This document shows positions 1-63,880 of a stretch of DNA of 64,000 nt, piece by piece. A model generated the notes under the pieces. That model was not told where the DNA came from and ran no database searches. It saw nothing but the letters and a program-made list of their open reading frames with translations. Position 1 is the stretch's first letter. Each line of letters starts with the position of its first letter. Location of the stretch: positions 146,158 through 210,157 of IMG/VR virus record IMGVR_UViG_3300009103_000001, one strand, 5' to 3'. Position numbers and translations under genes: made by a program.

Positions 1-561
1 AGAACCACCTAACCAACCAAATCTTATTAATTTATTTGATTTTTCTGGGTTTGGTGTGAATTGTTTTTCTTCTGGGTCTATTGTATTAGGGAATACTACT
101 ACGTTTTTATTTAAATTTTTAATTTCTTCAGCGAATATTTTAGTGGTAGTACTAACATAGTTAACTTTTTTTATGTTTTCTCTTATTTTTTGACTTAATT
201 TTTCTTTAATTATTATCTGATAAGCAGGATGTTCTTTACTTGGTTGCCAATAATCATCTAAATCCATTATAGTCAAAATACCTAGTTTATGTATTTTATT
301 CAATATCTCAAACATATCTTCTAGATATACTTGTTGATATGCACCGTTTTTTAATGATGGTAGTGTTCTGTGAAAATGTATAATATCAAAATTTTTCAAA
401 TACTTTTCATCCCAACTAAAAGTATCTGTACCGGCTGGCACAATTTCAACATAGAAATCATCATTATACAATTCTTGTAATTTCATATGGGGTTCAATTG
501 AACGAAATTTTGAAACCCCTGTTCTATCTGAAGGGAATACTAAAACATTTATTTTACTCAT
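1..561 (-). CDS. Glycosyltransferase (GT-B/GT4-like), runs off the left edge (3' end missing)
   Basis: Not in the ORF track. Manual translation from ATG at 561 is open to base 1: MSKINVLVFPSDRTGVSKFRSIEPH...IMDLDDYW...VSTTT...VFPNTID...RFGWLGGS. The DxDD, PNxID and GWxGG motifs are typical of phage GT-B glycosyltransferases. Confidence 0.65.
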   Translation of the reverse strand, partial: MSKINVLVFPSDRTGVSKFRSIEPHMKLQELYNDDFYVEIVPAGTDTFSWDEKYLKNFDIIHFHRTLPSLKNGAYQQVYLEDMFEILNKIHKLGILTIMDLDDYWQPSKEHPAYQIIIKEKLSQKIRENIKKVNYVSTTTKIFAEEIKNLNKNVVVFPNTIDPEEKQFTPNPEKSNKLIRFGWLGGS

Positions 562-622
562 AATTTTTAATTTGTATTAATATAATACATTATGAGTACT
601 TAGTAAATAAAAAATTATTTTA

Positions 623-20614: not shown

Positions 20615-20626
20615 TATTTAAATGAT

Positions 20627-24277: not shown

Positions 24278-24326
24278 AAATAAAATAATATATTTATAAT
24301 AATAACAATAAAAAAAACAATAAATT

Positions 24327-24590: not shown

Positions 24591-24592
24591 TT

Positions 24593-32672: not shown

Positions 32673-33322
32673 TGGAAGCAACATTTAAAATAAACATGGT
32701 GGATATTTGTGACATCCAATTAGGTGACCATTTTAATACATTAGTAAACAAATATTCTAATATTGCACAAACTTTAAATCCTGATAAATTTAATAAAGAA
32801 GAATTAGATTTAAACTTTCCTTATATAGAATCTAAACAACGTAAGTATTATGGTTTAGTAGAAACACTATGGAATAGTGGGTTATTAAAAGATAATATGA
32901 AAATTATAGATTTAGGTTGTGGTTTATGTACAACATTATATAATTTAAATTTACAATTTAAAAATTATAATATACCATCTAGTTTTTATGGTGTAGAATA
33001 TAATGAAGAGTTATTAAAAATATTTACCAAATATTTAAGTCCTCTTTGGGAAAATAATTTCCCTAAATTTGCTTTAGGCGATATTATGGACTGTGATTTG
33101 TCACAATACGATTTAATATTATCATATCAACCATTTAAAGATTTAGAATTATTAGAAAAAATGTATAATAAAGTTTTTAGTGAAATGAAATCTGGTTCTG
33201 TTTTTCACGAACACAATTATAAAGATAGAGAAGAAACTTTACTAAGAAGTGTCAATAATAACATTGAACCGAAAATATCTTTATTTGGTGGTGAAAAACA
33301 ACCTTTATTTATAAAAAAATGA
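32672..33322 (+). CDS. Class I SAM-dependent methyltransferase
   Basis: IDLGCG, YGVEYN, GDIMD and YDLILSY motifs. Confidence 0.8.
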   Translation: MEATFKINMVDICDIQLGDHFNTLVNKYSNIAQTLNPDKFNKEELDLNFPYIESKQRKYYGLVETLWNSGLLKDNMKIIDLGCGLCTTLYNLNLQFKNYNIPSSFYGVEYNEELLKIFTKYLSPLWENNFPKFALGDIMDCDLSQYDLILSYQPFKDLELLEKMYNKVFSEMKSGSVFHEHNYKDREETLLRSVNNNIEPKISLFGGEKQPLFIKK

Positions 33323-46467: not shown

Positions 46468-46956
46468 ATGGCAGATTTGCTGATGAGGATGCCCGTACCG
46501 TATGAACCAAAGAAAAAGAATAGGTTTATATTTAGATTTCCTACACCACTTGGTATTCAAGAATGGTTTGTGGCATCAGGTTCAAGACCTAGCGTCACTA
46601 TAGAAGAAACTGAAATACAGTTTTTAAATACCTCAACTTTTGTTGCTGGTAGATTTACATGGGAGACAATTGATGTTACATTCCGTGACCCAATTGGTCC
46701 TTCAGCAGCTCAAGCCCTTATGGAATGGGTTCGTTTACACGCTGAATCTGTTACTGGTAGAATGGGTTACGCAGCTGGTTATAAAAAAGATGTAGAATTA
46801 GAATTACTAGACCCAACAGGTGTTGTAATCGAGAAATGGATTTTACAAGGTACTTTCTTAACTGGTGTTAACTTCAACGATTTAGATTACTCTTCAAGTG
46901 ATATAGCTGATATTAACGCTACACTTAGATTTGATAGAGCAGTACACGTATTCTAG
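46468..46956 (+). CDS. Tail tube protein (T4 gp19-like)
   Basis: EPKKKNRFIF, FVAGRFTWETIDVTFRDPI, WVRLHAES.TGRMGYAAGYKK and EKWILQG.F. Confidence 0.92.
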   Translation: MADLLMRMPVPYEPKKKNRFIFRFPTPLGIQEWFVASGSRPSVTIEETEIQFLNTSTFVAGRFTWETIDVTFRDPIGPSAAQALMEWVRLHAESVTGRMGYAAGYKKDVELELLDPTGVVIEKWILQGTFLTGVNFNDLDYSSSDIADINATLRFDRAVHVF

Positions 46957-48336: not shown

Positions 48337-49092
48337 ATGTCTACAGAAAAAAATGAAATAAGTTTTGAAACGCCCTTTGATGTATTAGAATTACCATCAA
48401 AAGGTCTGTTATATCCAGGTCGACCAGAAACAGTTAAAGTTGAATATCTTACGGCCGCAGATGAAAATATTTTAACATCCCCAAATTTAATTAGAAGTGG
48501 TAAAGTTTTAGATGTTCTTTTAGAAAAAAAGATTAAAAGTACCGAAATACCAATGAAAGATATGTTAGTTGGTGATAGAAATGCTATTATGATTTGGTTA
48601 AGAGCGACAGGATATGGTGAAATGTATCCAGTTAGAATGGCTGACCCTATTACTGGTGAGGAATTTGAAACGGAAATAGATTTATCGAACTTAAAAACTA
48701 AGGAGTTGACAGCTCAACCAGATGAAAATGGTGAATTTAGTTTTGATTTACCAAGAAGTAAAAAGAAAGTTAAATTTAAACTTTTGACCGTTGGTGATGA
48801 AACTAGTATTGCTAAAAAATCGGAAATTAGAGGTAAAAACACACAAATTAGTAACGCTTTAACATATAGACTACAAGCACAAATTAAGGAAATTGATGGG
48901 AATAGAGACCCTAATGTGATATCAAGATTTGTAAATGTAATGCCAGCCTACGATTCACTTAAATTTAGAGAATATTCGGATGATATTGAACCAGGAATAG
49001 ATTTAGAGGTGGACGTGGAGGGTCCATCTGGCCCCTTTCGTAGTCCCTTTACAATTGGACTCAACTTTTTTTGGCCTAACGCCAGAGTATAG
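48337..49092 (+). CDS. Tail assembly chaperone / baseplate hub assembly protein (T4 gp26-like)
   Basis: LELPSKG..Y, LTAADENIL, GDRNAIMIWLRATGYG; located between tube and tape measure. Confidence 0.75.
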   Translation: MSTEKNEISFETPFDVLELPSKGLLYPGRPETVKVEYLTAADENILTSPNLIRSGKVLDVLLEKKIKSTEIPMKDMLVGDRNAIMIWLRATGYGEMYPVRMADPITGEEFETEIDLSNLKTKELTAQPDENGEFSFDLPRSKKKVKFKLLTVGDETSIAKKSEIRGKNTQISNALTYRLQAQIKEIDGNRDPNVISRFVNVMPAYDSLKFREYSDDIEPGIDLEVDVEGPSGPFRSPFTIGLNFFWPNARV

Positions 49093-51080: not shown

Positions 51081-53675
51081 ATGGCAGAAAATTTAGACCC
51101 AAAAAACTTAGATAAGTTTGTTAAAAATATGAAAGCCGCTCAAGAATACTCTAAGGAGGTTAATGAGAGTTTTGCGGCGTGGGGTAGGTCTGCAGCTAAA
51201 ATAAAAGAATATAGTGACGCGATAAAAAATAGACAAAAAATTATTGCTGAACTACAAAATCAGATTGCTGACGCTACTGAGGAAGAAAAAGAACAGTTAG
51301 AAGCTCAGATAGCCTATGAACAAGAGAAGATAAAACTTAATCAAGAACAATTAAAATTATTAAAAAAACAACGTAGTACTTTAAAAACTTTAGCCAATGA
51401 AACAATAAGTTTCTTAGGTAAACAAGGTGGTTTAGTTAATAAAGTTGTCGATGGTTTTACTAAGATGGATGGTTCTGCTAGAAGAATTTCAGTAGAAATG
51501 GGTATGGGTACCCTTAGAATGAGCCAATTTCAAATGGCTTCAGCTCAAGCAGCACAACAATTAGAGTTAATTGGTATTGAAGCGGCTGGAGCGGCTGAAA
51601 TGATGAGTTCATATGCTGACGAGACTGGTAGACAAGTTATACTTGGTAAAACACAGTTGGTACAAATGGGGGCTTTATCAAAAAGAACTGGTATGGCTCA
51701 CACAGAAATGGCTGGGTTAGCTGGTCAAATGGAAAGTTTTGGTATTGGTGCTGATGATTCTGTTGAACTGATTAGTGAAATAGCTGATATGTCTGACAAA
51801 ATGGGTGTGAATACTGCTAAAGTAATTAAGAAAGTACAAGGTAACTTAAAATTAGTAAATAAACTTAGTTTTAAGGGTGGTATTAGAGGTATGGCCCAAA
51901 TGGCAGCTCATGCTGAAAAATATAAGATAAACATGGAAGAGGTGGCTGGTTTCGCTGAAAAAGTATTTAGACCTGAAGGTGCTATTGATGCAGCAGCTAA
52001 TCTACAAGTGTTAGGTGGTAGTTTAGCTAATATGGGTGACCCTTTTCAATTAATGTATCAGGCTAGGCATGCTCCTGAAGAATTGGCCAAGTCATTAACC
52101 AAAGCGGCTGCTCAATCCGCGGTATTTAATAAAACTACTGGTGAGTTTGAAGTTAATGCTTTAGAATTAGACAGGTTGAGGGAGGCTTCTGAAGCTACAG
52201 GTATGAGTATGGAAATGCTTGTTGGTGTGGCTAAACAGAGTGCTAAAATGAATATGTTTGAAGATGTTTTAAAGGTTGGTGGTGAAGATAAGGAGTTTCT
52301 ATCTTCAATTGCTGAAATGAAAGATGGTAAAGCCCAAATAGCTATTGATGTAGACCCTAAGACTGGTGAAAAACAATATGCAAAACTATCAGAACTTTCT
52401 GCTAGTGAACAAATGGCTGCGGCCAAAAGACTAAAAAAGGAAAAAGAGTCAAATGAAGAGGCGGCTAGAAGAGCACAAGCTTCAATGGAGTTAATGAGAA
52501 ATAGTATGAACGCTTTATTAGCCTCATTTTATCCAGTATTAGTACGATTAGATAAAACACTTAGACCATGGATTGAATGGTTTGTCGACCAAACATTATG
52601 GTTAGGTAGTATGATTAAAAAATATTTTTCACCTTTGGGTGCAGTATTAACCGCTTTCGCACTTAAGTTTGGTATTAAGATGGCCACATGGATTATGCGT
52701 GGTAGGTGGTTAGGTATGGGGTTCAATATGACAGCCGGTAAGGGTGGTATGTTAAGTAGGATGTTTGGTGGTAAAGGTGGTGGTGGACCAGTAACAAAAT
52801 CTGGTAAACCCGATATGAGGTTTAAAGCTAATAAAACAGCGATGGGCGGTCAATCAGCGAAAGGTTTAGGTGCGACAGGTAAAGCCGTAGGTGGTTTTTC
52901 AAGTGCTGTTGGTAGTGCTGCACAAATTATCGCAATAGCCGGAGCTTTGTGGATTTTATCAGACGCGATAGTTAAATTAGCCGAAATACCTTGGCCAAAC
53001 TTATTAATGGCAACAGGTGTTCTTCTTGCTTTGGGCGTTGGTTTAGCTATTTTTATGAATTTTATGGCTGGTTTAGGACTTAATCCAGCTGTGTGGTTAG
53101 GTGTCGCTTTATTATTAGCGGTTGGTGCGGCATTTATGATGTTAGGTGCAGCAATTTACTTCATATCGGCGGGTGTTGCTTTAATTGTAGAATCCTTTAC
53201 TGGTTTATTCAGTGTTATAAATGCTGATAATATTGGTGCTTTATTATTACTAGGTCCAGCTTTAGCTGGTATTGGTTTAGGTATGATGGTTTTAACCGCT
53301 TCATTGATTGGTTTTGGTTTAGCGTGGCTCATTGGTGGTTGGGCTTTTGAAGACATGGCAGAGTCTATTGGGGCTTTAGGTAATACAGATTTATCTGGTT
53401 TAGGTACTGCTGTCCAAGCGATAAATAATGTTGACATGAATAAAATCGAGGCTCTTAGAGATTTAGCTAGTGCATTATCACTATTTAGTTTATTTAGTGG
53501 TGGAGGTATTAAAATTGATTTCGGTGATTTAGATGTTAAAGGTAAGATTGATTTAGAAGGAGAAGGTGGCGGAAGAACTTCAACTGATTGGGTAGAAGAC
53601 CCAATATTTGTATCTAAATTAAAAGATTTAATTTGGGAAACAATGGAAGCTGATAAAACTGGCGGCAAGCCTTAA
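51081..53675 (+). CDS. Tape measure protein
   Basis: Ala/Gly-rich helical protein with coiled-coil N-terminus and hydrophobic C-terminal half; canonical position after the chaperones. Confidence 0.85.
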   Translation: MAENLDPKNLDKFVKNMKAAQEYSKEVNESFAAWGRSAAKIKEYSDAIKNRQKIIAELQNQIADATEEEKEQLEAQIAYEQEKIKLNQEQLKLLKKQRSTLKTLANETISFLGKQGGLVNKVVDGFTKMDGSARRISVEMGMGTLRMSQFQMASAQAAQQLELIGIEAAGAAEMMSSYADETGRQVILGKTQLVQMGALSKRTGMAHTEMAGLAGQMESFGIGADDSVELISEIADMSDKMGVNTAKVIKKVQGNLKLVNKLSFKGGIRGMAQMAAHAEKYKINMEEVAGFAEKVFRPEGAIDAAANLQVLGGSLANMGDPFQLMYQARHAPEELAKSLTKAAAQSAVFNKTTGEFEVNALELDRLREASEATGMSMEMLVGVAKQSAKMNMFEDVLKVGGEDKEFLSSIAEMKDGKAQIAIDVDPKTGEKQYAKLSELSASEQMAAAKRLKKEKESNEEAARRAQASMELMRNSMNALLASFYPVLVRLDKTLRPWIEWFVDQTLWLGSMIKKYFSPLGAVLTAFALKFGIKMATWIMRGRWLGMGFNMTAGKGGMLSRMFGGKGGGGPVTKSGKPDMRFKANKTAMGGQSAKGLGATGKAVGGFSSAVGSAAQIIAIAGALWILSDAIVKLAEIPWPNLLMATGVLLALGVGLAIFMNFMAGLGLNPAVWLGVALLLAVGAAFMMLGAAIYFISAGVALIVESFTGLFSVINADNIGALLLLGPALAGIGLGMMVLTASLIGFGLAWLIGGWAFEDMAESIGALGNTDLSGLGTAVQAINNVDMNKIEALRDLASALSLFSLFSGGGIKIDFGDLDVKGKIDLEGEGGGRTSTDWVEDPIFVSKLKDLIWETMEADKTGGKP

Positions 53676-53786: not shown

Positions 53787-56700
53787 ATGCCAAACGCAAT
53801 AAATCCAGATTCTTATAACATTGACTATTTCCCTTCATCTCTGTTGGGTGTAACAACCGCTGATGATTATAGAGAACATCTTTTTCTTAAAAACCTTGGT
53901 GGTGCTATAGCACCAGAATTAGTGAGTTCTCCAGCTGGTTCATTTTCAGTACCTTTTCAAGATAGAGGTGATTTTAAATCGATTAATTATGGTGGCATTG
54001 GTAATCCAGGTAATATTGAAGAATGGTTATCTGAAGGTGGTTTTCCTACTACAGTACATGAGGTTAGGGACATTGGTTTATTACAAGCACAAAATAAATA
54101 CGGACCACCAACAATATCAGCATATAATTGTCCAGAGTTAATACCAGAAGATACGGGATTCATACAATACCCAACGTCAAGTGGTGGTGATGATTATAAA
54201 ACAATTTTAATTAATGACGCAATTGATAGTAATGTTGGTTTGGGACCTGGAGCAACAATTAATTTCCCTTCAGAATTAAATGATATAGCAAAAGAGAGAA
54301 GAAAAGAGGAAGCGATTAATAGGGTTAAACTAAACGTAGAAGATAATGTATTAGGCAAGTTAAATTTGGACCCATTCGGTTTATTAGCAGGACAAGATTT
54401 AATTTTAAGAGATTATAAAATAACAACAAGAAGAAATATTGTTGGTAAAATATTTGATACTGTCGCTGATTCAGCTGGTTTTAACATACCAACAAGTCCT
54501 ATTAAAAAGGGTGCCTTTGGTAGATATGGTGATTTAGATAACGCTGAAACATATAAAGATTTATTAAAAGCTACTGGTTCAGGTACAAAAAGTTTATTAT
54601 TTGATTCTGTTGGAAAAAATAAATATGGACCACAATTACAAGAACCAAAAGGATTTATCGCTAATACAGTTGGTGCTGGACAGGCTCCACAACAAAATAC
54701 ATATTTAACAGACCCAACAGAACAAATACAAGAAGAGAAAAAGGCGAAAAGAAATAAACCATTAGTTGATAAAGTTAATCAAGCGATTGGTAAAGCTATT
54801 GATGCTGTCGCTGGTTCACAAGCGATAGGTAAAGAAGACGACCAACCACCTAGTGAATTTAAAAACCCAACGGTTGAACCAGAACTTAATAGTGAAGATT
54901 ATGGTTTTGATGGGTTACCAAATAGGTCTAAAGATACATGGGAATTGGCTGGACCTACTACTGAATTTGATATAGATGAAGGTAGTATAGGGACTAGAGC
55001 TCCATTTGGTCAACAAACTGATTTAGGTTTCTTTTCGTTAAAACAAGAAATGTTTTGGGGCTCCACACCTAAAGGTTCAACAAACCCATTTAAAAGAGGT
55101 ATTTTAAAATATACACAGGATTTAATAAACAACACAAATGATAACACAGATATAATAAGTAAAGCTAGATTTATTGGTGTGGTTAATGATGATAGTAATT
55201 TCGATTCAAAAACTAGAAAACATAAAAACTATTCAATGGGTAATACTGTATCTTCTGATGGAACTTATTGTCGTTCATGGTCTGTTAGAAACCCATATTT
55301 AAAAGTAGGTGATTTAATTAGACATGGGGCTAGTGATGGTGCTGGTGGTTTTAATAGTTTAACACGACCAGATAGGGATTTAAGTGTACTAGGAAACAAT
55401 GGTTTTGTTAAGGTTGCACCATATGTTGGTGAAAAACAAGGTGGTTATGATAGTGGTGGTAAGGTTTTAAACTTAGGTGACCCAACCATACAAAAATATA
55501 TGTTATCAATTGAAAATTTAGCTTGGCAAAATACAGAACATATATTAAAAGTACCACCATGTGAAGTTGGACCAAACGGTGGTAGAATAATGTGGTTTCC
55601 ACCATATGATATTAATTTTACAGATAACTCAAGTGTTAGTTGGGATACAACAAATTTTATTGGTAGAGGTGAGCCAATATATACATATAATAATACTGAA
55701 AGAATGGGTACATTAGCTTTTAAATTGGTTATTGACCATCCATTAGCAATTTCAGAACTAAGAGAACAAGGTGAACAGGCACTATTTCAATTTTTTGCAG
55801 GATGTAAAAACCCATTAGAAGAGGCAAGTGCTTTAATATCTGTGTCAGATATAGAAGAAGTTAAAATACAAAATACACAAACAAAGTTGTTCCCAAACCC
55901 AAAATACCAAGAAATTCAAACACAACCAGCAGGAGACCCACCATCACCAGTTAGTTTTTATTTTAGAAATGCGAGAAAAGGAGCTAAAGATACTGTTGGT
56001 ACACAACCAGACACAGAAATTAATGCTGGTTATTTATATGGTGACCCACCAACAGTATTACCATATATTGAAGAACAAACACCACAGGGACCAATAGGAG
56101 TATATAATCCAGCATTTTCTGGTGATGTGGCTGCAAACTATGAACAAAATCTTGATGACGCTAGAAATAAACTGGCTGTAGAAAGAATAACAGATGAAAT
56201 AATACCGTTTTTATTATCACCAAGAGGTAAAAGATTTACTATTAATATTGTTGGTAAAACTAGTGATGCAAATACATCAAGTTTTAATGAAAAATTAGGT
56301 GAAGCTAGAGCTAAAAATACCGAAGAATGGTTTTATCAACTTCTAAAAGGTAGTGAGTTGGGTACCGACCCAATAAAGGCTGAAAATCTCGGTTCAGAAG
56401 AAACATACCCAACAGAAACAACGTGGAAAGGCAGTAAGTTAAGATGGAATGTTTATTCGACAGGTGAAAAGGGGTCTTCTGATTCTGTAATAATAAACGA
56501 GGATGGTTCAACATCAATTGGCAGAGATGATAATAAAGTATATGGTGATACAGATTATAATGACCCAGGTGCGGTTAACGATAGAAGAGTAGATATAACA
56601 TTTACACATAACCCAGAAATAGATGATTCAATGATTGGACCTGCATCTGGAGAAAAAGAGTTTATATCTGTAACTACAACATCTGAAATAATACAACAAA

Positions 56701-58106
56701 GAGAAATTGACGCTGAAAGAAAAAAAGAATTGGAACAAATTGAACAAGCTAAAGTATTAGCGAGAAAGGCGTCACAATATATGGCTTGGGAATGTTCTTA
56801 TTTTGAGAAAATGAAACAAGATGACCCATTTGTGTATGATACACTAACACAAAAATTAAAATATTTTCATCCCGCATTCCACTCAATGACACCTGAAGGC
56901 TTTAATTCAAGGTTAACATTTTTAAAACAATGTACAAGACAAGGTCCTAATATTGCATCAAATGAACCAAATAATTTAGCATTTGGTAAACCACCTATAT
57001 GTGTATTAAGGGTTGGTGATTTTTATCATACAAAAATAGTTATTGACACAGTTAACTTAACATTTGACCCACTTATTTGGGATTTAAATCCAGAAGGAAT
57101 TGGGGTACAACCAATGGTTTGTAGTGTTGACCTTAACTTTAAGTTTATTGGTGGTTCATCATTAGGTGGACCAATAGCACAATTACAGAACGCCGTTGGG
57201 TTTAACTTTTTTGCTAACACAGGGTTATATAACCCAAGAACAATATATGAATCTGTGGGTGAATATAAGGCTAAAGAGGTGGACCCATCAACAGGTAAAG
57301 AAACAGAAACAAAAATAGATACACCAAATGAATCTAAACAACCATTTGGTTATGGAGCATTTATTGTACCAGGTGAGTCAATTCAAGATGGTGAGTTTAG
57401 TACTGAGGACCCAGTTAATGATTTTTATGAACAAAAACAAATACAAGCAGAAGCTGATAGAGCTAAAAAGGCTAAAATGGCACAAGCCGAAAGGGATAGA
57501 ATTGCGGCAAAAGAAGCGAAAGAGGCTAAAGAAGCCGCTATAGAGTCTGAAAAAGAAATAGCTAAAACATTTGGTAGTGTAACAAAGGCTACACTTAGGA
57601 ATTTAGGTGCCGGAAGTTGGTCCGAAACTGGTGTTTTATCTTTAGAGGTAGAAACAAGTGACCCATTTATAGTTTGGGATTCAGCACAACCAACAGACGT
57701 AAGTGGTACAGATAGTCCATTTAACTCTAATAATAAATATGGTACTGGTATTACGGCTTTAGTTGGTGAAGGTTTGAATGATGTTTTCTATTATTATCAA
57801 GACTTTGATAGTTGGGTTTCTTTTAATGGTACAAGTACTAAAAAAATTACTATTGTGTTTAAAAATTCATATAAAGCTTTAGATACCACGGGTAAAGGTA
57901 AAAATAGAAACTCAGAAAAAGTAGGAACTACACAATCTGTTAATGGTAAAACAATTTCGTTCACAATATTTGGTAAATTAATTGGTGATAGTGGTGAGGA
58001 TATAAAAGTTTCTACAAATATAACTTTTATAATGTCAGCAGAAGATAACGGTAAAACAAAAACATCATTTAATAATGAAAGCGAGATAATACCAACTACA
58101 ACATAA
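53787..58106 (+). CDS. Tail tube initiator / baseplate protein (gpU/gp48-54-like) with inserted OmpA-like domain
   Basis: WFPPYD..F.DNS.VSW..T.FIGRGEP.YTY and PP.C.LR.GDFY.TKI.I half-motifs flank an IVGKTS...FNEKLGEARA...NDRRVDI segment. Confidence 0.65.
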   Translation: MPNAINPDSYNIDYFPSSLLGVTTADDYREHLFLKNLGGAIAPELVSSPAGSFSVPFQDRGDFKSINYGGIGNPGNIEEWLSEGGFPTTVHEVRDIGLLQAQNKYGPPTISAYNCPELIPEDTGFIQYPTSSGGDDYKTILINDAIDSNVGLGPGATINFPSELNDIAKERRKEEAINRVKLNVEDNVLGKLNLDPFGLLAGQDLILRDYKITTRRNIVGKIFDTVADSAGFNIPTSPIKKGAFGRYGDLDNAETYKDLLKATGSGTKSLLFDSVGKNKYGPQLQEPKGFIANTVGAGQAPQQNTYLTDPTEQIQEEKKAKRNKPLVDKVNQAIGKAIDAVAGSQAIGKEDDQPPSEFKNPTVEPELNSEDYGFDGLPNRSKDTWELAGPTTEFDIDEGSIGTRAPFGQQTDLGFFSLKQEMFWGSTPKGSTNPFKRGILKYTQDLINNTNDNTDIISKARFIGVVNDDSNFDSKTRKHKNYSMGNTVSSDGTYCRSWSVRNPYLKVGDLIRHGASDGAGGFNSLTRPDRDLSVLGNNGFVKVAPYVGEKQGGYDSGGKVLNLGDPTIQKYMLSIENLAWQNTEHILKVPPCEVGPNGGRIMWFPPYDINFTDNSSVSWDTTNFIGRGEPIYTYNNTERMGTLAFKLVIDHPLAISELREQGEQALFQFFAGCKNPLEEASALISVSDIEEVKIQNTQTKLFPNPKYQEIQTQPAGDPPSPVSFYFRNARKGAKDTVGTQPDTEINAGYLYGDPPTVLPYIEEQTPQGPIGVYNPAFSGDVAANYEQNLDDARNKLAVERITDEIIPFLLSPRGKRFTINIVGKTSDANTSSFNEKLGEARAKNTEEWFYQLLKGSELGTDPIKAENLGSEETYPTETTWKGSKLRWNVYSTGEKGSSDSVIINEDGSTSIGRDDNKVYGDTDYNDPGAVNDRRVDITFTHNPEIDDSMIGPASGEKEFISVTTTSEIIQQREIDAERKKELEQIEQAKVLARKASQYMAWECSYFEKMKQDDPFVYDTLTQKLKYFHPAFHSMTPEGFNSRLTFLKQCTRQGPNIASNEPNNLAFGKPPICVLRVGDFYHTKIVIDTVNLTFDPLIWDLNPEGIGVQPMVCSVDLNFKFIGGSSLGGPIAQLQNAVGFNFFANTGLYNPRTIYESVGEYKAKEVDPSTGKETETKIDTPNESKQPFGYGAFIVPGESIQDGEFSTEDPVNDFYEQKQIQAEADRAKKAKMAQAERDRIAAKEAKEAKEAAIESEKEIAKTFGSVTKATLRNLGAGSWSETGVLSLEVETSDPFIVWDSAQPTDVSGTDSPFNSNNKYGTGITALVGEGLNDVFYYYQDFDSWVSFNGTSTKKITIVFKNSYKALDTTGKGKNRNSEKVGTTQSVNGKTISFTIFGKLIGDSGEDIKVSTNITFIMSAEDNGKTKTSFNNESEIIPTTT

Positions 58107-58112
58107 AAAATA

Positions 58113-58430
58113 ATGGCAAGAAGATATTACGATAGATACCAAGATTTTAAGGAAAATGGAAAAAGTACAACATTACCATTTTTAAAATTACCAGTGAAGA
58201 AAACAGATAAAAGAACTGTTACTGATAGCAGAACTAGATTTGACAAGATTAGTCAACAATATTATGGTACACCATACTATGGATGGTTAATTTTACAAGC
58301 TAACCCAGAATATGGTGGACTTGAGTTTGACATTCCTGAAAATACAATTATAATAGTACCATATCCTTTAAATACTTCTTTACAGGATTATCAGGCAGCA
58401 ATAACAAGATATAAGAGATTATATGACTAA
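58113..58430 (+). CDS. LysM-like baseplate protein (P2 gpX / T4 gp53-like)
   Basis: RFDKISQQYYG..YYGWLILQANP...IP..T.I.VP pattern and position. Confidence 0.75.
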   Translation: MARRYYDRYQDFKENGKSTTLPFLKLPVKKTDKRTVTDSRTRFDKISQQYYGTPYYGWLILQANPEYGGLEFDIPENTIIIVPYPLNTSLQDYQAAITRYKRLYD

Positions 58431-58441
58431 AAGTTTTTAAA

Positions 58442-61400
58442 ATGGGAGTATTAGATGGTCCAGAACCAAGAGTTTATTCAGATAATGGCATTAGATATAT
58501 TGACCCTAACCCTACTGATGAAATTATAAACCAAGAAGACTTAGTTATTTACGTTAATTTAAAGGCTAGGACAAAGGGTAGAAGTATAGTAACAAATACA
58601 GATGCTTCAATAATAGAAATAGAGGGTTTTAATTCTAATGTAGCAAAAGAAACAAATTTCACTTATCCTACCGGACAAAGTGAATTAACAACAGATTGGA
58701 CAAATATTGGTGGTGGTACATTATTACCTGGTGAAGACACTGGTGGTTTTGGTATTACAAATGTTAACATCGAATTTAAGTCTAGTTTCATGCCAAAGAT
58801 TGTAATAGATTTTGTGGACATTAGAGGTGCAACACTTTTTGAACAAGGGCCATGTTCACCTTACGCAGCATTTTTTCATTTACCATACCCAGTGTTTGAA
58901 TTAACAATAAAAGGTTATTATGGAAAACCAGTTAAATATACCTTAGCTTTAGTTAAGTTTAACACAAAGTTTAATGCTGATACTGGTAATTTCGAATCAA
59001 GGGGTGAATTTGTAGGGTATACATATGCTTTTTTAGCAGACATACCAATGGGGTATGTTATGGCAGCAACCTATATGACAAAACCACTTAATGGTAAAGA
59101 AGTTTTAAAAGAAAAATGGGACAAATTAAAACAAGAACACCCAGAATTAGCCAACACAACAGATGGATTACCAAACGAACCACTAACAATACAAGATTTA
59201 ATATTAAAATCACAAAAGTTAGAAAAATTAGCACCATCAATAAGAAGTAGTCCAGAAGTTAATACGTTAAATAAAATTAACGCAATTAAAGATGACTTCC
59301 AAAAGGTGATAGCATTAATTACAGAATACCAACGAAAATTTAAAGAAATGGGTGGTAAAAGTAAAAAAGGTGGTGATGGTTTAGGTAATAAAATGGTGAC
59401 AGAACTAAGTAATTTAACAAAACTAAATCAAGGTACTGAGGGTGACCCAGGATTATCGTTAATATATTTTGGTGATGGTACTGAAACATCATTTAAAACA
59501 AGCCTTATTGGTACAAAATTAACTTTATTAATTTCTGAATTACAGGCGGGCGGTGTAATAAATGATATTAATTTAACAAGTTTTATACCTGATATTACTA
59601 TAGAAAAAATAAATAATAATTGTGTAAATTTTTTGGGGGGAACTGATGATAGAACTCAGGAATCTTATATTGATATTGGTGAATCTGTTTTAGTACCATT
59701 AAATATACAATTAAAGAGTTTAGATGAGTTTAATAAAAAAATAAAAGACAATGTAAAAGATGAGATAAATAGAGTGGTTAAAAGTGAAGCAGGTTTAGGT
59801 TTTAACCCAAGTGTTAGAAATGTTTTTGCTATAATTTTAATAAATGTTGAAGTATTTTTAGAGTTAATGGTGGTAACATCTGAAAACGCTGAAAATGAAC
59901 ATAAAACTAACTCTGAAAATATTAAAGGTAGTTTAAGTAGTACTAATAATATTTTAAATAATAAAAATAAAGATTCAGTAATATACCCATGGCCAACTTA
60001 TTATGAAGTTACAACTGGTACTCTTAAGGGTGAAAAAGAAACATACCCAGGTGAAAATATAAATTTTATTGCTTGGCCAGAAGTTATTTTTGTTGAAGAT
60101 TTTGTTAACGCTTTAACAAAACTTAGAATAGAATTAGATATTATAGCTGGTGATTTTGAAGATATGGCGGGCTTCGATAATTATAGACCAATATCACCAT
60201 TTGAAACACAAGCTTTTGGTGATGAAAGGGCACCAAATAGATGGTTTAATTTTGAACAATCTGGTGAACAGTTTATTAATGAGATTTGGAGAATTTTAGG
60301 TGAAAATGCTTTTTTAGTTGGTGACTATACTATGATTAATAGTCTTACTTTATGGAAGTCACAATTAGGTTTAAGAGATACATGGGGATATAATACACAA
60401 ACACAAACACCAGCAGGGATACCAAACCCATCAATGGGTGGGCCACCGAGATTCAAAGACTTAGATTTAGGTATTTCAAATGGTAAAATAACAAATAGAT
60501 ATAAATATACAGAACAAGAAGGTTGGGGTAAAAGAGGTGCAAGAGGTAAGATTACTACAACAAATAAAGAAAGAATGAAACAGTGGGGATATGTAGATGG
60601 TTTAAATTTCATCAACATATGTAAAGACGATGTTATATTAACATATGTAAAGAATTTAACAAATACAGAAGGTGGTGGCATAACAGATGAAGATGTGGAT
60701 TCAATAACAGAAAGTATAATAAGTTATATGTCAAAAAATAGTGATTTTACTGAACAAACATTTGACGAATGGAGAAACACAGCTTCAGCTGAAATAAATA
60801 ATGGTGTAGCTAATTCAGATTTTATACCAGACCCAGCAGTAGAACCCGAATATTGGAAAAATGCTTCACAGGGAGAAGATGGTGGTGAGGGTATGTACAA
60901 AGATAATCCAGACCCATTACCAGATAGTGCCGGAAACTCAGTATTAACACTAAAGGGTCCTATTAAGTTAAATGAGAACCTTGAAGTATCAGAAACATAT
61001 ATTTCAGCTAACCCACACAGAAATGCAATGTCTGGTGTTAGACTATTAGAACCAACGTCTAGTGAGTTAGATGGTAGAAATATTGATTTAAATATTGATA
61101 CCATTCCTGGTGGACAAGCCATGATTAGTGCTTATGAAGAAAATTATAGTGACACAACAGAATCAGACACAGATTCAGAAGAAACAAAAACAGGCGCTGT
61201 AAAAGGAAATTTATGTAGAATACTTTTAGATGGTAGAGGAAAAGGTGAATTAGGGTCTGTACAAAAAAGAAAAGAGCCAATAGCTTATCATAGTGAGATA
61301 AAAAAAACAAGTTTTACTAGCCCATATGATGTTCAAATTAGTTGTAGTTCCAATGCGAATTGTGGGTTCGCTAGAGATGAGTATAGGTTAAATGCAGACC

Positions 61401-63880
61401 CAAAAACAGGTTTATTATCATACGGTAAAGATTATAAATCAAACTTTTTTGTACAGGCCTATGAAAAAGGTTCAGGAAGTGATGAAGGTAGAGCGTTTTG
61501 GCATTTAGGTTCATCTAGAACTGTTTGGTATAACGCCCCAACAACCATTGGAAACGGTTTACAAGCTAATGCTGTTTGGGCAGATTTTATTGGAGCTACC
61601 GCTTGGTCAACAGATGGTTTAGCAGATTTATTATGGCAAACACCGTTATGGACACTTAATTACCCTTTATATAAGAGACCAGCATACACCATTACACTTG
61701 GATTTAAAACAGGTGGTGGGCCTAAGAATTATGTCTCACTATCTGAGAGACTCAATGCTGGAAATAAAGATGACCCACAAACATCTATTTCTACAGAAGA
61801 AAACTATAGTAGAAATTTTGATACTTGGTGGGGTTTAAATCAATATACAGTTAAAAGATTTGACCCAAATAACCCAGATGCGGCTGGCGGTCAGTTTGAT
61901 AAAACCTATAGAAATTATGGTAAACTAAAAGACCAAATTAAACCCTTAGCTTATTTATTTATAATGTCACAGGGTTTAAATGACCCAAATGATAGTTTTG
62001 GTTATTTTCCACCATACGATGGAATTTCTTTTAACCATATTGGTTGTTTTTCTAGTTTTGGTAGTTCTACTTGTATGGCAGACGTACCAAAATCTTGGGT
62101 TTTAGTTATTGGAGCAATTTTATGGAGAGCAAAGGAAAGTGGTAATTTAAATTGGTATTTAAGTTCAAATAATGATAACATAGAACCATCAAAAGCTTTA
62201 CCAAATGGGTGGAATAATGCGAATAAATCAGTTGGTATAGATGATTTAAATGACCCTGTTTGGTTTTTCCATAATTCCATCTCAAAACCATGGCATTGGG
62301 GTGGTTGTGTTTTTGATAACTGGGGAGCTACTCAAACTGGTGGAGGAATAATAGAGTGGAATGGTGGTGCTACTAGGTGGTCTAGAAAGTATTTAGGACA
62401 AACAGATACTGGTGTTGATAGGTGGGCTGGCACAGAATATTATGACCCAGATTCTACCTCCCCAAACACCCCAAAGGGTACCGATGACAATAAATGGCGT
62501 CGTACTAATTTTGCCATAGGACCTGACGTAGATTTTAGTTCACTTCATGGTGAGGATACGGGTAGTGTTAAGGAATTTACTAAAACTGAGCCAAGTTATA
62601 GAGGATGGACAAAATCACATGTTGGGGGTCAAATAGGGAGTGTAAAACGTTCAGACCAAAGTCTTGGAACATTACCAAAAAGGGAAGCGGAAGGGATTTT
62701 TGTTAAAGTTAATAGTAACATGCGTGGAGAACATAATATAAATAAAGGGTTATTCGATGTTTGTAGACCAGACCAAATACCAGTAATATATTATACACCA
62801 GGAGCAAACTATACGAATAAAAGAGATTCATGGGTTGGACAAGGACAAAATGACGGACCATATAGATTTCCATATAGACCAAAAACATTAGTTATTAGTG
62901 ATATTTCTGGTCAAGAAAAAAATCAAGACATTAAGGGGACAACTTATTCTTGGCCTAGTGGGGGTAACTCTAATTGGGTTAAAAATGCGACATATGATAA
63001 TAGATATCTTGATTTGAAGAGAGATGTTAAGGAATTAATGTATTTACCATCTAGTATAAAAAAAGATTTTATAAAAGCTTTTGAAGATTTCGCTAATGAT
63101 GCTCAGAGTTGGTTACCAGTTGTAGACCCATTAAATTGGGCAGCTAGTAGTAAAATGTTAGGTGAATATGAGGGAATAGATGGTACTGTCGCAGCATACC
63201 AAGGCATTAAGGGATTTCTTAGTGAAACAGAAAGAAATAATTTGAGTTGGGGTAAGGGTACTACCAAATCAACAGGATTTCAATTAGCTTATAGATTGGA
63301 CGTTAAACCGACATTGAGGACTTATAGTGTTGGTACATTAGGTAAAAGTGCGGCTAAGTCAACAGAGACCAACGCAAGAAGTGAGGCTGAAAGTGATGCC
63401 ATTACTAGTGGTGCTGTCTGTTTTACTTATGGACATAAAGTTAGACAAACATTTAATAAAGTTAAAAATATAGAAGATATAAATATTGGGGACACGGTTT
63501 TAAGTTATGACTTAGAGGAAAATGAATTTTTAGAAAAAGTGGTTAAAGATATTAAAATTAATTATATGGATAAATTAATTAAAATAATATTAAAAAATGG
63601 TATACATATAACCACCACAACACAACACCCATTTTTTATAAAAAATAAAGGATTAGCTTCTTATGATAATAGTGGGGTATCAACAGAAATGGGTGGAACT
63701 ATAAAAAAATTAAATATTAACGATATTTTATACTATTATAATGATAATGAGTTTATTGAAGTAGAAATTAAAAATATAATATTAATAAATAAACAAAAAA
63801 AGGTTTTTGATTTAGAGATAGAAGGTGGTAGTTCTTATATTGTAAATAATGTTTATACACATCAGGGTACTAAAAATTAA
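58442..63880 (+). CDS. Baseplate hub-like protein with C-terminal Hint domain
   Basis: 1812 aa; follows the LysM-like gene; N-terminal GFGI..V.I.F...F.P.I.I.FVD.RG region is hub-like. Confidence 0.6.
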   Translation: MGVLDGPEPRVYSDNGIRYIDPNPTDEIINQEDLVIYVNLKARTKGRSIVTNTDASIIEIEGFNSNVAKETNFTYPTGQSELTTDWTNIGGGTLLPGEDTGGFGITNVNIEFKSSFMPKIVIDFVDIRGATLFEQGPCSPYAAFFHLPYPVFELTIKGYYGKPVKYTLALVKFNTKFNADTGNFESRGEFVGYTYAFLADIPMGYVMAATYMTKPLNGKEVLKEKWDKLKQEHPELANTTDGLPNEPLTIQDLILKSQKLEKLAPSIRSSPEVNTLNKINAIKDDFQKVIALITEYQRKFKEMGGKSKKGGDGLGNKMVTELSNLTKLNQGTEGDPGLSLIYFGDGTETSFKTSLIGTKLTLLISELQAGGVINDINLTSFIPDITIEKINNNCVNFLGGTDDRTQESYIDIGESVLVPLNIQLKSLDEFNKKIKDNVKDEINRVVKSEAGLGFNPSVRNVFAIILINVEVFLELMVVTSENAENEHKTNSENIKGSLSSTNNILNNKNKDSVIYPWPTYYEVTTGTLKGEKETYPGENINFIAWPEVIFVEDFVNALTKLRIELDIIAGDFEDMAGFDNYRPISPFETQAFGDERAPNRWFNFEQSGEQFINEIWRILGENAFLVGDYTMINSLTLWKSQLGLRDTWGYNTQTQTPAGIPNPSMGGPPRFKDLDLGISNGKITNRYKYTEQEGWGKRGARGKITTTNKERMKQWGYVDGLNFINICKDDVILTYVKNLTNTEGGGITDEDVDSITESIISYMSKNSDFTEQTFDEWRNTASAEINNGVANSDFIPDPAVEPEYWKNASQGEDGGEGMYKDNPDPLPDSAGNSVLTLKGPIKLNENLEVSETYISANPHRNAMSGVRLLEPTSSELDGRNIDLNIDTIPGGQAMISAYEENYSDTTESDTDSEETKTGAVKGNLCRILLDGRGKGELGSVQKRKEPIAYHSEIKKTSFTSPYDVQISCSSNANCGFARDEYRLNADPKTGLLSYGKDYKSNFFVQAYEKGSGSDEGRAFWHLGSSRTVWYNAPTTIGNGLQANAVWADFIGATAWSTDGLADLLWQTPLWTLNYPLYKRPAYTITLGFKTGGGPKNYVSLSERLNAGNKDDPQTSISTEENYSRNFDTWWGLNQYTVKRFDPNNPDAAGGQFDKTYRNYGKLKDQIKPLAYLFIMSQGLNDPNDSFGYFPPYDGISFNHIGCFSSFGSSTCMADVPKSWVLVIGAILWRAKESGNLNWYLSSNNDNIEPSKALPNGWNNANKSVGIDDLNDPVWFFHNSISKPWHWGGCVFDNWGATQTGGGIIEWNGGATRWSRKYLGQTDTGVDRWAGTEYYDPDSTSPNTPKGTDDNKWRRTNFAIGPDVDFSSLHGEDTGSVKEFTKTEPSYRGWTKSHVGGQIGSVKRSDQSLGTLPKREAEGIFVKVNSNMRGEHNINKGLFDVCRPDQIPVIYYTPGANYTNKRDSWVGQGQNDGPYRFPYRPKTLVISDISGQEKNQDIKGTTYSWPSGGNSNWVKNATYDNRYLDLKRDVKELMYLPSSIKKDFIKAFEDFANDAQSWLPVVDPLNWAASSKMLGEYEGIDGTVAAYQGIKGFLSETERNNLSWGKGTTKSTGFQLAYRLDVKPTLRTYSVGTLGKSAAKSTETNARSEAESDAITSGAVCFTYGHKVRQTFNKVKNIEDINIGDTVLSYDLEENEFLEKVVKDIKINYMDKLIKIILKNGIHITTTTQHPFFIKNKGLASYDNSGVSTEMGGTIKKLNINDILYYYNDNEFIEVEIKNIILINKQKKVFDLEIEGGSSYIVNNVYTHQGTKN
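63419..63865 (+). other. Hint (intein-like) domain, 149 aa, no endonuclease, ends HQ followed by G
   Basis: Block A CFTYGHKV (Cys1660), IEDINIGD.V, block B TTQHPF, block F KVFDLEIEG..SY and block G VYTHQ, then GTKN-stop. Confidence 0.9.

What the first reader, a model, noticed from the sequence alone, without database searches (positions are those of the whole stretch)
55948..56610. OmpA-like peptidoglycan-binding domain inserted inside a tail tube-initiator protein
Seen: SFYF...INIVGKTSDANTSSFNEKLGEARAKNT...NDRRVDITF mirrors the OmpA C-terminal consensus (G.TD..G...YN..LS..RA..V...NRRVEI). It sits between the two halves of the tube-initiator-like fold. Known: OmpA-C domains bind peptidoglycan non-covalently. 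Inference: the tail tip may anchor to the cell wall during penetration, next to a LysM-like protein.
Basis: partly seen in the sequence, partly recalled or inferred. Interest (0 to 1): 0.6.

Follow-up and report, generated by a model that had tools for sequence, protein, structure and literature searches.

The report
OmpA-like domain inside phage tube initiator
A giant baseplate protein of a large uncultured contractile-tailed phage really does carry a cell-wall-binding-type (OmpA-like) domain spliced into the middle of its tail-tube fold, but one key wall-binding residue is replaced throughout the family, so wall anchoring is plausible and unproven.

Summary
ORF 53787-58106 (+, 1439 aa) follows the putative tape-measure gene of a 210-kb IMG/VR myovirus record. 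Residues about 706-943 (window 55902-56615) form an OmpA_C-like domain.

- **Sequence evidence:** on this sequence alone Pfam is sub-threshold (15.8 bits against a cut-off of 27.2). However, 103 of 111 homologous segments hit PF00691, and the family profile finds OmpA, Pal and YfiB structures (best E 9e-7).
- **Fold evidence:** the AlphaFold model (pLDDT above 90 in the domain) superposes on A. baumannii OmpA (Z 11.8, 2.5 Å, 122 of 123 residues).
- **Flanks:** residues about 568-672 and 1036-1130 together align to tail-tube and tube-initiator proteins of solved contractile systems (Z 7-8.4). The "inserted inside a tube-like fold" claim is therefore supported at model level.

The architecture is ancient and widespread, with more than 582 viral contigs.

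The functional inference is only partly supported. Of the motif TD(x)7NxxLSxxRA, Asn, Leu and Arg are nearly universal. The Asp that holds the diaminopimelate amine is Ser in at least 93% of members. An Asp-to-Ala change abolishes DAP binding in Tp0624. Wall-binding-type domains on tube initiators (LysM) are known to act as structural connectors.

My reading is a peripheral connector domain with a conserved, non-canonical pocket that may grip the wall after firing. I rate it a new variant of a known kind.

The parts
53787..58106 (+). Whole ORF, 1439 aa (P0001): giant baseplate-core protein in the tube-initiator/tube-cap position
   Evidence: ORF list and translation. There are 836+ homologues, many carrying precomputed PF00691. 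Synteny is conserved in a relative of about 33% identity.
53787..55469 (+). N-terminal region, aa 1-561: conserved in the family (for example invariant C495-R-S-W498), fold unknown
   Evidence: Alignment A4. No Pfam, PHROG or PDB match. The AF2 model has mean pLDDT 57.7, too low for a fold call.
55488..55802 (+). First half of the tail-tube-type fold, aa ~568-672: strands, a long beta-hairpin and a helix
   Evidence: Model m2263089306e2 secondary structure. VIA matches to tube and initiator chains span model 7..569. BFVD gives hits to 'contractile injection system tube protein N-terminal domain' proteins.
55902..56615 (+). OmpA_C-like domain, aa ~706-943, about 110 residues longer than the canonical domain because of enlarged loops
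   Evidence: pLDDT is mostly above 90.
56253..56312 (+). Ligand-pocket motif GKTSDANTSSFNEKLGEARA: S826 replaces the canonical Asp; N834, L837 and R841 are kept
   Evidence: HMM alignment to PDB OmpA domains. Spacing of 8, 3 and 4 residues equals TagL D486, N494, L497, R501.
56616..56891 (+). Helical linker, aa ~944-1035, Lys/Glu-rich, returning the chain to the tube fold
   Evidence: Model helices 406-489, partly low pLDDT.
56892..57176 (+). Second half of the tail-tube-type fold, aa ~1036-1130; the most conserved stretch of the family
   Evidence: Invariant columns in A1 and A3. Model strands 511-559. VIA ranges end at model residues 562-572.
57276..58103 (+). C-terminal variable region, aa ~1164-1439: Lys/Glu/Ala-rich coil, then a beta-rich tail; not conserved across the family
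   Evidence: Consensus is lost after aa ~1150. The only hit is a weak one to a 'transglycosylase' PHROG that falls on the low-complexity coil; I judge it spurious.
58113..58430 (+). 105-aa LysM-like baseplate protein (P2 gpX / T4 gp53 type), conserved neighbour
   Evidence: PHROG baseplate wedge E 0.0014 and baseplate hub E 0.0038. No Pfam hit. A gene of 103-106 aa sits in the same position in L001 and L002. Weak predicted docking on aa 700-960: 0.58 against a best control of 0.00.
51081..53675 (+). 864-aa putative tape measure protein, assigned by position and composition only
   Evidence: Coiled N-terminal part and Gly/hydrophobic C-terminal part. No family hit. Large genes of 968 and 901 aa sit in the same position in L001 and L002.
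58442..63880 (+). 1812-aa downstream baseplate protein with a C-terminal Hint/intein-like module
   Evidence: In relative L002 the gene in this position carries Peptidase_M15.
48337..49092 (+). T4 gp26-like baseplate hub protein (context)
   Evidence: PF12322 E 5.8e-9; phrog_150.
46468..46956 (+). Tail tube protein (context; shows P0001 is not the main tube subunit)
   Evidence: phrog_4542 E 2.5e-29; PF06841 E 2e-4.
34554..37337 (+). Tail sheath protein (context: contractile tail)
   Evidence: phrog_23 E 2.3e-53; PF04984 and PF17482. The nearest named phages by tblastn are Microcystis phage Mel-JY01 and Flavobacterium 'immuto' phages, at about 31-34% identity.

Best explanation
**What it is (shown).** P0001 is the baseplate-core protein that occupies the tube-initiator/tube-cap position of a large contractile-tailed phage. 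Its tube-type beta-barrel is interrupted, just after the helix that follows the long beta-hairpin, by a complete OmpA_C-like alpha/beta domain (aa ~706-943). A helical linker then returns the chain to finish the barrel.

**How it most likely works (inferred).** In solved tails the equivalent face of tube proteins points away from the lumen. The six inserted domains would therefore decorate the outside of the first tube ring.
- In the resting virion they would act as the peripheral connector domain that other tube initiators also have: LysM in Pvc7/Afp7/AlgoCIS, an alpha/beta domain in A-1(L) gp18. They would dock the small LysM-like 'glue' protein and the wedge/sheath-initiator ring.
- The ligand pocket is under strong selection. 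Ser-Asn-Leu-Arg plus the last-strand Arg are kept in at least 93% of members, in a domain that is otherwise about 15-25% identical.
- When the sheath contracts and the tube tip, with its initiator ring, is driven through the outer membrane, the freed pockets probably hold the peptidoglycan layer in a non-canonical way, because the Asp that binds the DAP amine is Ser. This would steady the tip beside the wall-degrading hub.

The wall-binding step is the least certain part.
For: - **Fold and homology of the insert:**
- **Split tube fold:** 17 non-OmpA rows are tube, initiator or Hcp chains spanning model 7..569. Examples are P1 9ay5_G (Z 8.4, 130 aligned), phi812 9euf_M (Z 8.3, 145), Pvc7 9qgl_7A (Z 8.0, 142) and A-1(L) initiators 8kea_P (Z 7.2, 147). 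BFVD gives hits to CIS tube N-terminal domain proteins (E ~1e-3, prob 1.0) and to cyanophage gp48.
- **Gene order mirrors T4:** gp26-like, 590 aa, tape-measure-like, P0001, LysM-like, giant protein. The order is conserved in L001.
- **The insert is universal in the family**.
- **Pocket residues:** S 85/91, N 86/91, L 89/91, R 90/91, last-strand R 90/91; all invariant in 111 closer homologues. They correspond to the DAP-contacting Asp486, Asn494, Leu497, Arg501 of TagL.
- **Geometry:** in phage 812 the tube initiator travels through the wall on the tube tip.
- **Hub enzyme:** a relative's downstream giant protein carries Peptidase_M15.
- **Connector precedents:**
- **Docking test:** the LysM-like neighbour docks on aa 700-960 with weak support. 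The score was 0.58 against a best control of 0.00. The mark was reached by 51 of 78 solved complexes and 2 of 108 mismatched pairs, but scores of 0.60 or under were seen in only 5 of those 78 and in all 4 passing mismatches. The runs agree in at least 50% of contacts, and partner pLDDT is at least 65.
Against: - The canonical Asp of TD(x)7NxxLSxxRA is missing family-wide. In Tp0624 an Asp-to-Ala change goes with no DAP binding by ITC or crystal soaks.
- Two of the three loops that frame the crevice are much enlarged (read).
- One clade (L036, L059) has lost Ser, Asn and Arg yet keeps the insert, so the domain can persist without the pocket.
- Asn, Leu and Arg are also the generic signature of the fold, so their conservation is not proof of ligand binding.
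- Tube-fold matches are in the middling Z range, on a part of the model with pLDDT 50-88. No sequence family for tube initiators matches.
- Six copies of a 1439-aa protein make a very bulky ring to push through an envelope.
- No binding experiment exists.
Confidence: 0.45

Rival explanations
1. Purely structural connector. The OmpA-like domain has been co-opted as a protein-protein module inside the baseplate and never touches the wall. It would be the functional equivalent of the LysM or alpha/beta domain of other tube initiators. Its conserved crevice would bind a phage partner, for instance a tail or carboxylate of the LysM-like protein, much as TolB occupies Pal's peptidoglycan site.
For: - LysM-type domains on or beside tube initiators are structural in Pvc7, A-1(L) and phage 812.
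- The canonical Asp is lost.
- Docking of the LysM-like neighbour has weak support: 0.58 against a best control of 0.00, with the caveats.
- The insert is retained in a clade that lost the pocket residues.
- TolB/Pal complexes are among the structural neighbours (2hqs).
Against: - Ser, Asn, Leu and Arg are kept in about 93-99% of very divergent members from contigs labelled with many host phyla. A universal external ligand such as peptidoglycan explains this more simply, although a co-evolving internal partner could also do it.
- The complex score falls in the band the tool calls more often wrong than right.
Confidence: 0.35
2. Canonical OmpA-type anchoring, exactly. The domain binds the meso-DAP of uncross-linked stem peptides non-covalently, as OmpA, Pal and MotB do.
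For: Full OmpA fold. Asn, Leu and Arg are in register with the DAP contacts of TagL and AbOmpA.
Against: The Asp that coordinates the DAP amine is Ser throughout. Published precedent ties loss of this Asp to loss of DAP binding. The crevice loops are enlarged.
Confidence: 0.1
3. The flanks are not a tube initiator. P0001 is some other baseplate or hub component whose beta-rich flanks merely resemble tube proteins in a moderate-confidence model.
For: Z is only 7-8.4, in the tool's 'middling' range. There is no Pfam or PHROG match for tube cap, tube initiator or CIS tube. The protein is four to five times longer than known initiators.
Against: - Non-OmpA matches are almost all tube, initiator or Hcp chains that use both flanks together.
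- Independent BFVD hits point to the same fold.
- The position after the tape-measure-like gene is conserved.
- A separate 162-aa tube gene exists.
Confidence: 0.1

Closest known systems
OmpA_C-like peptidoglycan-binding domains (A. baumannii OmpA 3TD3-5, Pal, TagL, MotB; Pfam PF00691)
   Same: Same beta-alpha-beta-alpha-beta-beta fold: Z 11.8, 2.5 Å, 122 of 123 residues. Same NxxLxxxR core and last-strand Arg, in register with the DAP contacts.
   Different: - Asp of the TD motif is Ser.
- The domain is about 110 residues longer through enlarged loops.
- It is embedded in a virion protein rather than a periplasmic or envelope protein.
- This copy is below Pfam's gathering score.
Treponema pallidum Tp0624 divergent OmpA-like domain (5JIR)
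   Same: OmpA fold with Arg kept and the critical Asp replaced; a structural neighbour (Z 8.6).
   Different: Tp0624 has Ala and a shifted motif, is a bacterial envelope protein, and was shown not to bind DAP. Here the replacement is Ser, Asn is kept, and nothing has been measured.
Tube initiators with an accessory wall-binding-type domain: Pvc7/Afp7/AlgoCIS Alg7 (LysM), A-1(L) gp18 (alpha/beta domain), T4 gp48/gp54
   Same: Tube-type barrel at the base of the tube. An extra alpha/beta domain lies on the outside, beside a LysM 'glue' protein. The gene sits after the tape measure.
   Different: - In those proteins the accessory domain is C-terminal and LysM-like or small. Here it is an OmpA-like domain inserted mid-fold.
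- The protein also has a 561-aa N-terminal extension and a ~275-aa C-terminal extension.
- There is no detectable sequence similarity.
T6SS wall anchors TagL/TssL with OmpA-like domains
   Same: An OmpA-like domain attached to a contractile injection machine; structural neighbour 7bba/5m38 (Z 11.5 and 11.1).
   Different: TagL anchors the membrane complex of the attacker cell to its own wall. It keeps the Asp, and mutagenesis shows it binds the wall. Here the domain is on the projectile end of a virion.

Membership tests
OmpA_C-like domain (PF00691 / OmpA-MotB-Pal fold) | Beta/alpha/beta/alpha/beta/beta fold with a four-stranded sheet | tested here: met
   AF2 model with pLDDT mostly above 90 in this part. 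Z 11.8, rmsd 2.5 Å, 122 of 123 residues of 3td4_B. 88 chains score Z of 8 or more, and the listed top matches are all OmpA-like. Foldseek top 50 are nearly all OmpA-like.
OmpA_C-like domain (PF00691 / OmpA-MotB-Pal fold) | Score above Pfam's gathering cut-off | tested here: not met
   This sequence scores 15.8 bits, E 0.018, against a cut-off of 27.2. Homology is rescued by relatives: 103 of 111 segments hit at E <= 0.01, best 1.5e-11, and the family profile against the PDB gives best E 9e-7.
OmpA_C-like domain (PF00691 / OmpA-MotB-Pal fold) | Binding motif TD(x)7NxxLSxxRA: critical Asn and Arg (and Leu) | tested here: met
   N834, L837 and R841 are invariant in 111 homologues and present in 86, 89 and 90 of 91 distant ones. 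The motif definition comes from PMC5104382 and the TagL contacts.
OmpA_C-like domain (PF00691 / OmpA-MotB-Pal fold) | Binding motif: critical Asp that holds the DAP amine | tested here: not met
   S826 aligns to the Asp of GHTD. It is Ser in 111 of 111 and 85 of 91; only 1 of 91 has Asp.
OmpA_C-like domain (PF00691 / OmpA-MotB-Pal fold) | Non-covalent binding of peptidoglycan | not testable with these tools
   Needs a sacculus pull-down, or ITC with DAP or muropeptides.
Contractile-tail tube initiator / tube cap (T4 gp48/gp54, Pvc7, A-1(L) gp18) | Tube-type beta-barrel fold | tested here: met
   Z 6.5-8.4 with 113-147 aligned residues to P1, phi812, PVC, diffocin, pyocin R2, A-1(L), AlgoCIS, Streptomyces CIS and Hcp chains, all spanning model 7..569. 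Caveats: Z is middling and pLDDT is 50-88 in these parts.
Contractile-tail tube initiator / tube cap (T4 gp48/gp54, Pvc7, A-1(L) gp18) | Gene placed after the tape measure and next to hub and LysM genes, separate from the main tube gene | tested here: met
   The same order is seen in L001 and L002. The tape measure itself is assigned by position and composition only.
Contractile-tail tube initiator / tube cap (T4 gp48/gp54, Pvc7, A-1(L) gp18) | Sequence membership in a described family (PF11091 T4_tail_cap, PF19266 CIS_tube, PF06841, PHROG tube-initiator families) | tested here: not met
   No hit at E <= 10 for the flanks. No PF11091 or PF19266 match anywhere in the 210-kb record.
Contractile-tail tube initiator / tube cap (T4 gp48/gp54, Pvc7, A-1(L) gp18) | Hexameric ring between hub and first tube disc | not testable with these tools
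   The size limit of the complex tool (1000 residues) excludes a hexamer. It needs cryo-EM or a larger multimer prediction.
LysM baseplate 'glue' protein (P2 gpX / T4 gp53 LysM) - the neighbour gene | LysM-type domain recognised by a family model | tested here: inconclusive
   PHROG 'baseplate wedge subunit' E 0.0014 and 'baseplate hub' E 0.0038. No Pfam hit and no PDB sequence hit. Size and position are conserved.

The most novel reading that the evidence does not exclude
A two-state wall-binding switch on the tube tip. In the resting baseplate the Ser-variant OmpA pocket is plugged by a phage partner, the LysM-like glue protein, analogous to TolB occluding Pal. Firing strips the partner away and exposes six pockets. 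These recognise a peptidoglycan feature that canonical OmpA domains do not, for example DAP whose amine is acylated in cross-links. That would clamp the tube tip to the sacculus while the hub enzyme cuts it. It would amount to a new peptidoglycan-recognition specificity shared by hundreds of large phages.
Probability: 0.12. Interest if true: 0.75.

Novelty: new variant of a known kind. Interest (0 to 1): 0.5.

Why it matters
It is still poorly understood how the tip of a contractile tail behaves inside the periplasm: what steadies it, and how it finds and crosses the wall.

Tube initiators with LysM-type accessory domains are known, and those domains are treated as structural. This family is widespread (more than 582 viral contigs from many environments). 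It carries a different wall-binding fold, inserted mid-barrel, with a pocket that is strongly conserved but altered at one key residue.

If the pocket binds the wall, this would be a directly testable case of a virion tube-tip wall anchor, and of a Ser-variant OmpA specificity. If it does not, it is a clean example of a peptidoglycan-binding fold recruited as baseplate cement. Either way it annotates a large 'hypothetical protein' family and defines a soluble domain that can be expressed and assayed without culturing the phage.

Tried and rejected
- **tblastn of the whole protein against 50,697 phage records:** no match.
- **phmmer against PDB:** only chance hits in the C-terminal tail.
- **Pfam and PHROG on the flanks and on the N- and C-terminal regions at E <= 10:** nothing. 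The one exception is a 'transglycosylase' PHROG hit (E 0.0097) that falls on the Lys/Glu/Ala coil; I reject it as low-complexity.
- **PF11091 and PF19266 across the whole 210-kb record:** none.
- **Profiles of the core and N-terminal region against PDB:** only OmpA hits, or nothing.
- **AF2 of aa 1-561:** pLDDT 57.7, not searched further because low-confidence models give meaningless matches.
- **ESM Atlas feature search of aa 1-561:** best score 0.81, within the noise band.
- **Search for insert-less relatives with the C-half:** the 227 short hits are mostly fragments on short contigs. The one I opened (L002) is split by a run of N in a scaffold, and the apparent 143-aa gene between the pieces is spurious. 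I found no evidence for a natural insert-less version.
- **Inserts that seemed to lack OmpA by HMM:** most still carry the motif by eye and in the alignment. Pfam detects only some of them.
- **Complex prediction of aa 700-960 with the LysM-like protein:** 'weak support' only (0.58 against a best control of 0.00). I use it as a hint, not as a finding.
- **The look-up of encoding contigs for P0018:** not on record.
- **Literature searches for an OmpA-like domain in a phage tail, baseplate or tube:** only T6SS papers.
- **Not used:** the reads tools, any alternative genetic code, and the large representative-protein search. The family was already well populated and no claim here rests on absence of relatives.
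Full report
**Setting**

The window is the last 64 kb of a 210,157-bp IMG/VR virus record. The record is linear, about 64% complete by CheckV, and 30% G+C.

The + strand from about 34 kb onward is a contractile-tail module:
- sheath, 34554-37337 (phrog_23, E 2.3e-53)
- tube, 46468-46956 (phrog_4542, E 2.5e-29)
- a T4 gp26-like hub protein, 48337-49092 (PF12322, E 5.8e-9)
- an unassigned 590-aa gene
- an 864-aa gene that I call the tape measure from position and composition only
- the 1439-aa target ORF, 53787-58106
- a 105-aa LysM-like gene
- an 1812-aa gene that ends in a Hint module

This order parallels T4 (26, 27, 29, 48/54 ... 53, 5). The sheath is only about 31-34% identical to its nearest named relatives, Microcystis phage Mel-JY01 and the Flavobacterium 'immuto' phages.

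**Check of the observation**

The quoted peptides are present: SFYF at aa 723-726, GKTSDANTSSFNEKLGEARA at aa 823-842, and NDRRVDITF at aa 931-939. The given start is one base out of phase. In frame the span is aa 721-941.

On this sequence alone the OmpA call is marginal. PF00691 scores E 0.018 and 15.8 bits, against a cut-off of 27.2. It becomes solid with relatives:
- The word search returned 836+ homologues, all metagenomic, many with precomputed PF00691 and some named 'OmpA-like peptidoglycan-associated protein' by JGI.
- Of the 120 listed homologues, all but one contig-end fragment contain the segment.
- Of 111 aligned segments, 103 hit PF00691 individually, best E 1.5e-11.
- The profile of the 111 segments finds 46 PDB sequences, almost all OmpA, Pal, YfiB, MotB or TagL-type, best E 9e-7.

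**Structure**

An AlphaFold2 model of aa 562-1163 was built on 115 homologues. Mean pLDDT is 76, and mostly above 90 across the insert.

Foldseek against the PDB returns almost only OmpA-like domains. VIA-align gives Z 11.8, rmsd 2.5 Å, with 122 of 123 residues of A. baumannii OmpA (3td4_B) aligned to model 145-382, which is aa 706-943. The fold is therefore complete. The extra ~110 residues lie in loops.

**The flanks**

An exhaustive alignment to 48,161 PDB representatives gives a second class of matches. These span model residues about 7 to 569, so they use both flanks and skip the insert:
- P1 tail-baseplate 9ay5_G: Z 8.4, 130 residues aligned
- phage 812 baseplate 9euf_M: Z 8.3, 145 aligned
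- Photorhabdus Pvc7 9qgl_7A: Z 8.0, 142 aligned
- diffocin 8v3w_G: Z 8.0
- pyocin R2 6u5b_h: Z 7.5
- Streptomyces CIS 9gtp_P: Z 7.3
- cyanophage A-1(L) 'baseplate-initiators' 8kea_P: Z 7.2, 147 aligned
- AlgoCIS 7aeb_M: Z 6.8
- Hcp1: Z 6.7, plus several tail-tube proteins

BFVD independently gives hits to 'contractile injection system tube protein N-terminal domain' proteins (E ~1e-3, probability 1.0) and to the cyanophage 'baseplate tail tube cap' (E 0.04-0.06).

These Z values are in the range the tool calls middling, and the flanks have pLDDT 50-88. No sequence model of tube caps or initiators matches. The uniform identity of the matches, the use of both halves together, the separate main tube gene and the gene position make a tube-type barrel in the initiator/cap position the best reading. 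I put this at about 0.85.

The insertion point is after the helix that follows the long beta-hairpin. By analogy with solved tubes this is on the outer face. That last point is inference.

**Spread and age**

Patterns from the core find more than 582 loci in IMG/VR. They also find 14 in species-representative genomes. The bin labels of those 14 include Bacteroidales, Flavobacteriaceae, Prevotella, Paludibacteraceae, Gammaproteobacteria and a Prochlorococcus single-cell assembly. A few labels are implausible (Methanobacterium, Mycoplasmatota), so I do not trust the labels as host calls.

A relative with about 33% identity, on a 292-kb contig, has the same gene order.

In the 90 loci where both half-barrels could be placed, an insert of 181-541 aa lies between the two halves. 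The shortest (L010) is a minimal OmpA-like domain. The insertion therefore predates the radiation of the family. I found no natural insert-less member. The short hits are fragments, and the one I opened is split by a scaffold gap.

**The pocket**

Published work defines the binding motif as TD(x)7NxxLSxxRA, with Asp, Asn and Arg most critical (PMC5104382). In TagL the DAP contacts are Asp486, Asn494, Leu497 and Arg501 (PMC8253398).

The HMM alignment and the identical 8-3-4 spacing place S826, N834, L837 and R841 at these positions. Their conservation is as follows:

| Position | 111 closer homologues | 91 more distant sequences |
|---|---|---|
| S826 | invariant | 85 |
| N834 | invariant | 86 |
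| L837 | invariant | 89 |
| R841 | invariant | 90 |
| R933 (last strand) | invariant | 90 |

Mean column identity across the 111 aligned segments is only 15%.

Two conclusions follow:
- The pocket is under selection, so it probably binds something.
- It is not the canonical pocket. The residue that holds the DAP amine is systematically Ser. In Tp0624 an Asp-to-Ala change goes with no DAP binding by ITC or crystal soaks.

One clade (L036, L059) has lost Ser, Asn and Arg but keeps the domain. At least part of the domain's value is therefore independent of the pocket.

**Mechanism**

Solved baseplates show that tube initiators usually carry a peripheral accessory element:
- In Pvc7, Afp7 and Alg7 it is a LysM-like domain. 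It binds the wedge and sheath initiator and stabilises the baseplate-trunk interface (PMC12546770).
- In A-1(L), gp18 has an alpha/beta domain that pairs with the tail of the separate LysM protein gp16 (PMC10966104).

A 230-residue domain on the outside of the first tube ring must contact such neighbours. A connector role in the resting virion is therefore close to unavoidable; this is inference.

A co-fold of aa 700-960 with the 105-aa LysM-like neighbour gave weak support:
- The score was 0.58 against a best control of 0.00.
- The mark was reached by 51 of 78 solved complexes and 2 of 108 mismatched pairs.
- Scores of 0.60 or under were seen in only 5 of those 78, and in all 4 mismatches that passed.
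- The runs agree in at least 50% of contacts, and partner pLDDT is at least 65.

I take this as a hint only.

[quoted passage not shown] In one relative here the downstream giant protein carries Peptidase_M15. The OmpA-like domains would thus arrive exactly where peptidoglycan is.

| Reading | Probability |
|---|---|
| Connector in the resting state, with the conserved non-canonical pocket gripping the wall after firing | 0.45 |
| Purely structural reading | 0.35 |
| Strictly canonical DAP binding | 0.10 |
| The flanks are not a tube initiator at all | 0.10 |

**Comparison and novelty**

- **As a fold:** this is a member of the OmpA_C-like superfamily. Two membership features are not met, namely the Pfam cut-off on this copy and the critical Asp.
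- **As a tail part:** it works like a tube initiator with an accessory wall-binding-type domain. It differs in three respects: the domain is OmpA-like rather than LysM, it is inserted mid-barrel rather than appended, and the protein is four to five times larger than known initiators.

Full-text searches found no description of an OmpA-like domain in a phage tail or baseplate protein. Automatic pipelines have tagged some homologues with PF00691. I rate it a new variant of a known kind, of moderate interest.

**Limits**

- No binding data exist.
- The tube fold rests on a moderate-confidence model.
- The stoichiometry, the orientation of the insert and the fate of the protein after contraction are all inferred by analogy.
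- The host is unknown.
- The N-terminal 561 aa and the C-terminal ~275 aa remain unassigned.
- The reads tools and alternative genetic codes were not used.

Noticed in passing
window 58442-63880 (+), aa ~1650-1807 = nt ~63389-63862: The 1812-aa baseplate protein downstream ends in a Hint/intein-like module: Intein_splicing E 2.4e-7, Hint E 2.2e-5, PT-HINT E 1.5e-4, all under their Pfam cut-offs. No domain follows it, and the contig ends 120 nt later. A C-terminal autoprocessing module on a hub or spike-position protein is unusual.
   Followed up: no
window 33319-34266 (+): A patatin-like phospholipase (PF01734, E 3.6e-24) is encoded just upstream of the tail sheath gene, inside the structural block.
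   Followed up: no
window 47151-48176 (-): An M42-like peptidase gene (phrog_4191 E 7.8e-43; PF05343 E 4.5e-4, below cut-off) lies on the opposite strand between the tube gene and the gp26-like hub gene.
   Followed up: no
L002:9089-14239: In a relative on a 233-kb scaffold, the giant gene after the LysM-like gene carries Peptidase_M15, a cell-wall peptidase family. No such domain was detected in the window's 1812-aa counterpart.
   Followed up: partly
L002:7184-8000: The homologue looks split into 820-aa and 254-aa genes with a 143-aa gene between them. The gap is a run of N in a scaffold, and the 143-aa ORF is a low-complexity artefact.
   Followed up: yes
L010:3334-3876 (contig labelled Prochlorococcus sp. 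AG-409-L21, single-cell assembly): This homologue has a minimal 181-aa insert that still reads GYAS...N..LA..RA...RRVDL, although Pfam finds nothing in it. It may mark an infected cell, and it gives the smallest natural version of the domain.
   Followed up: partly
L036:6352-7260 and L059:6352-7185: A clade in which the inserted domain is kept but the Ser, Asn and Arg pocket residues are lost. Pfam finds no OmpA there.
   Followed up: partly
window 53787-55469 (aa 1-561 of the target ORF): A large conserved N-terminal region with invariant residues, including C495-R496-S497-W498 and the N-terminal MPNAINP. It has no family, PDB or confident fold assignment.
   Followed up: partly
window 17816-26740 (+): Three consecutive large genes (932, 1216 and 715 aa) share repeated matches to the same PHROGs: phrog_347 'tail terminator', and phrog_24074. 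Two of them also match phrog_8510. This suggests paralogous virion proteins built from a shared module.
   Followed up: no
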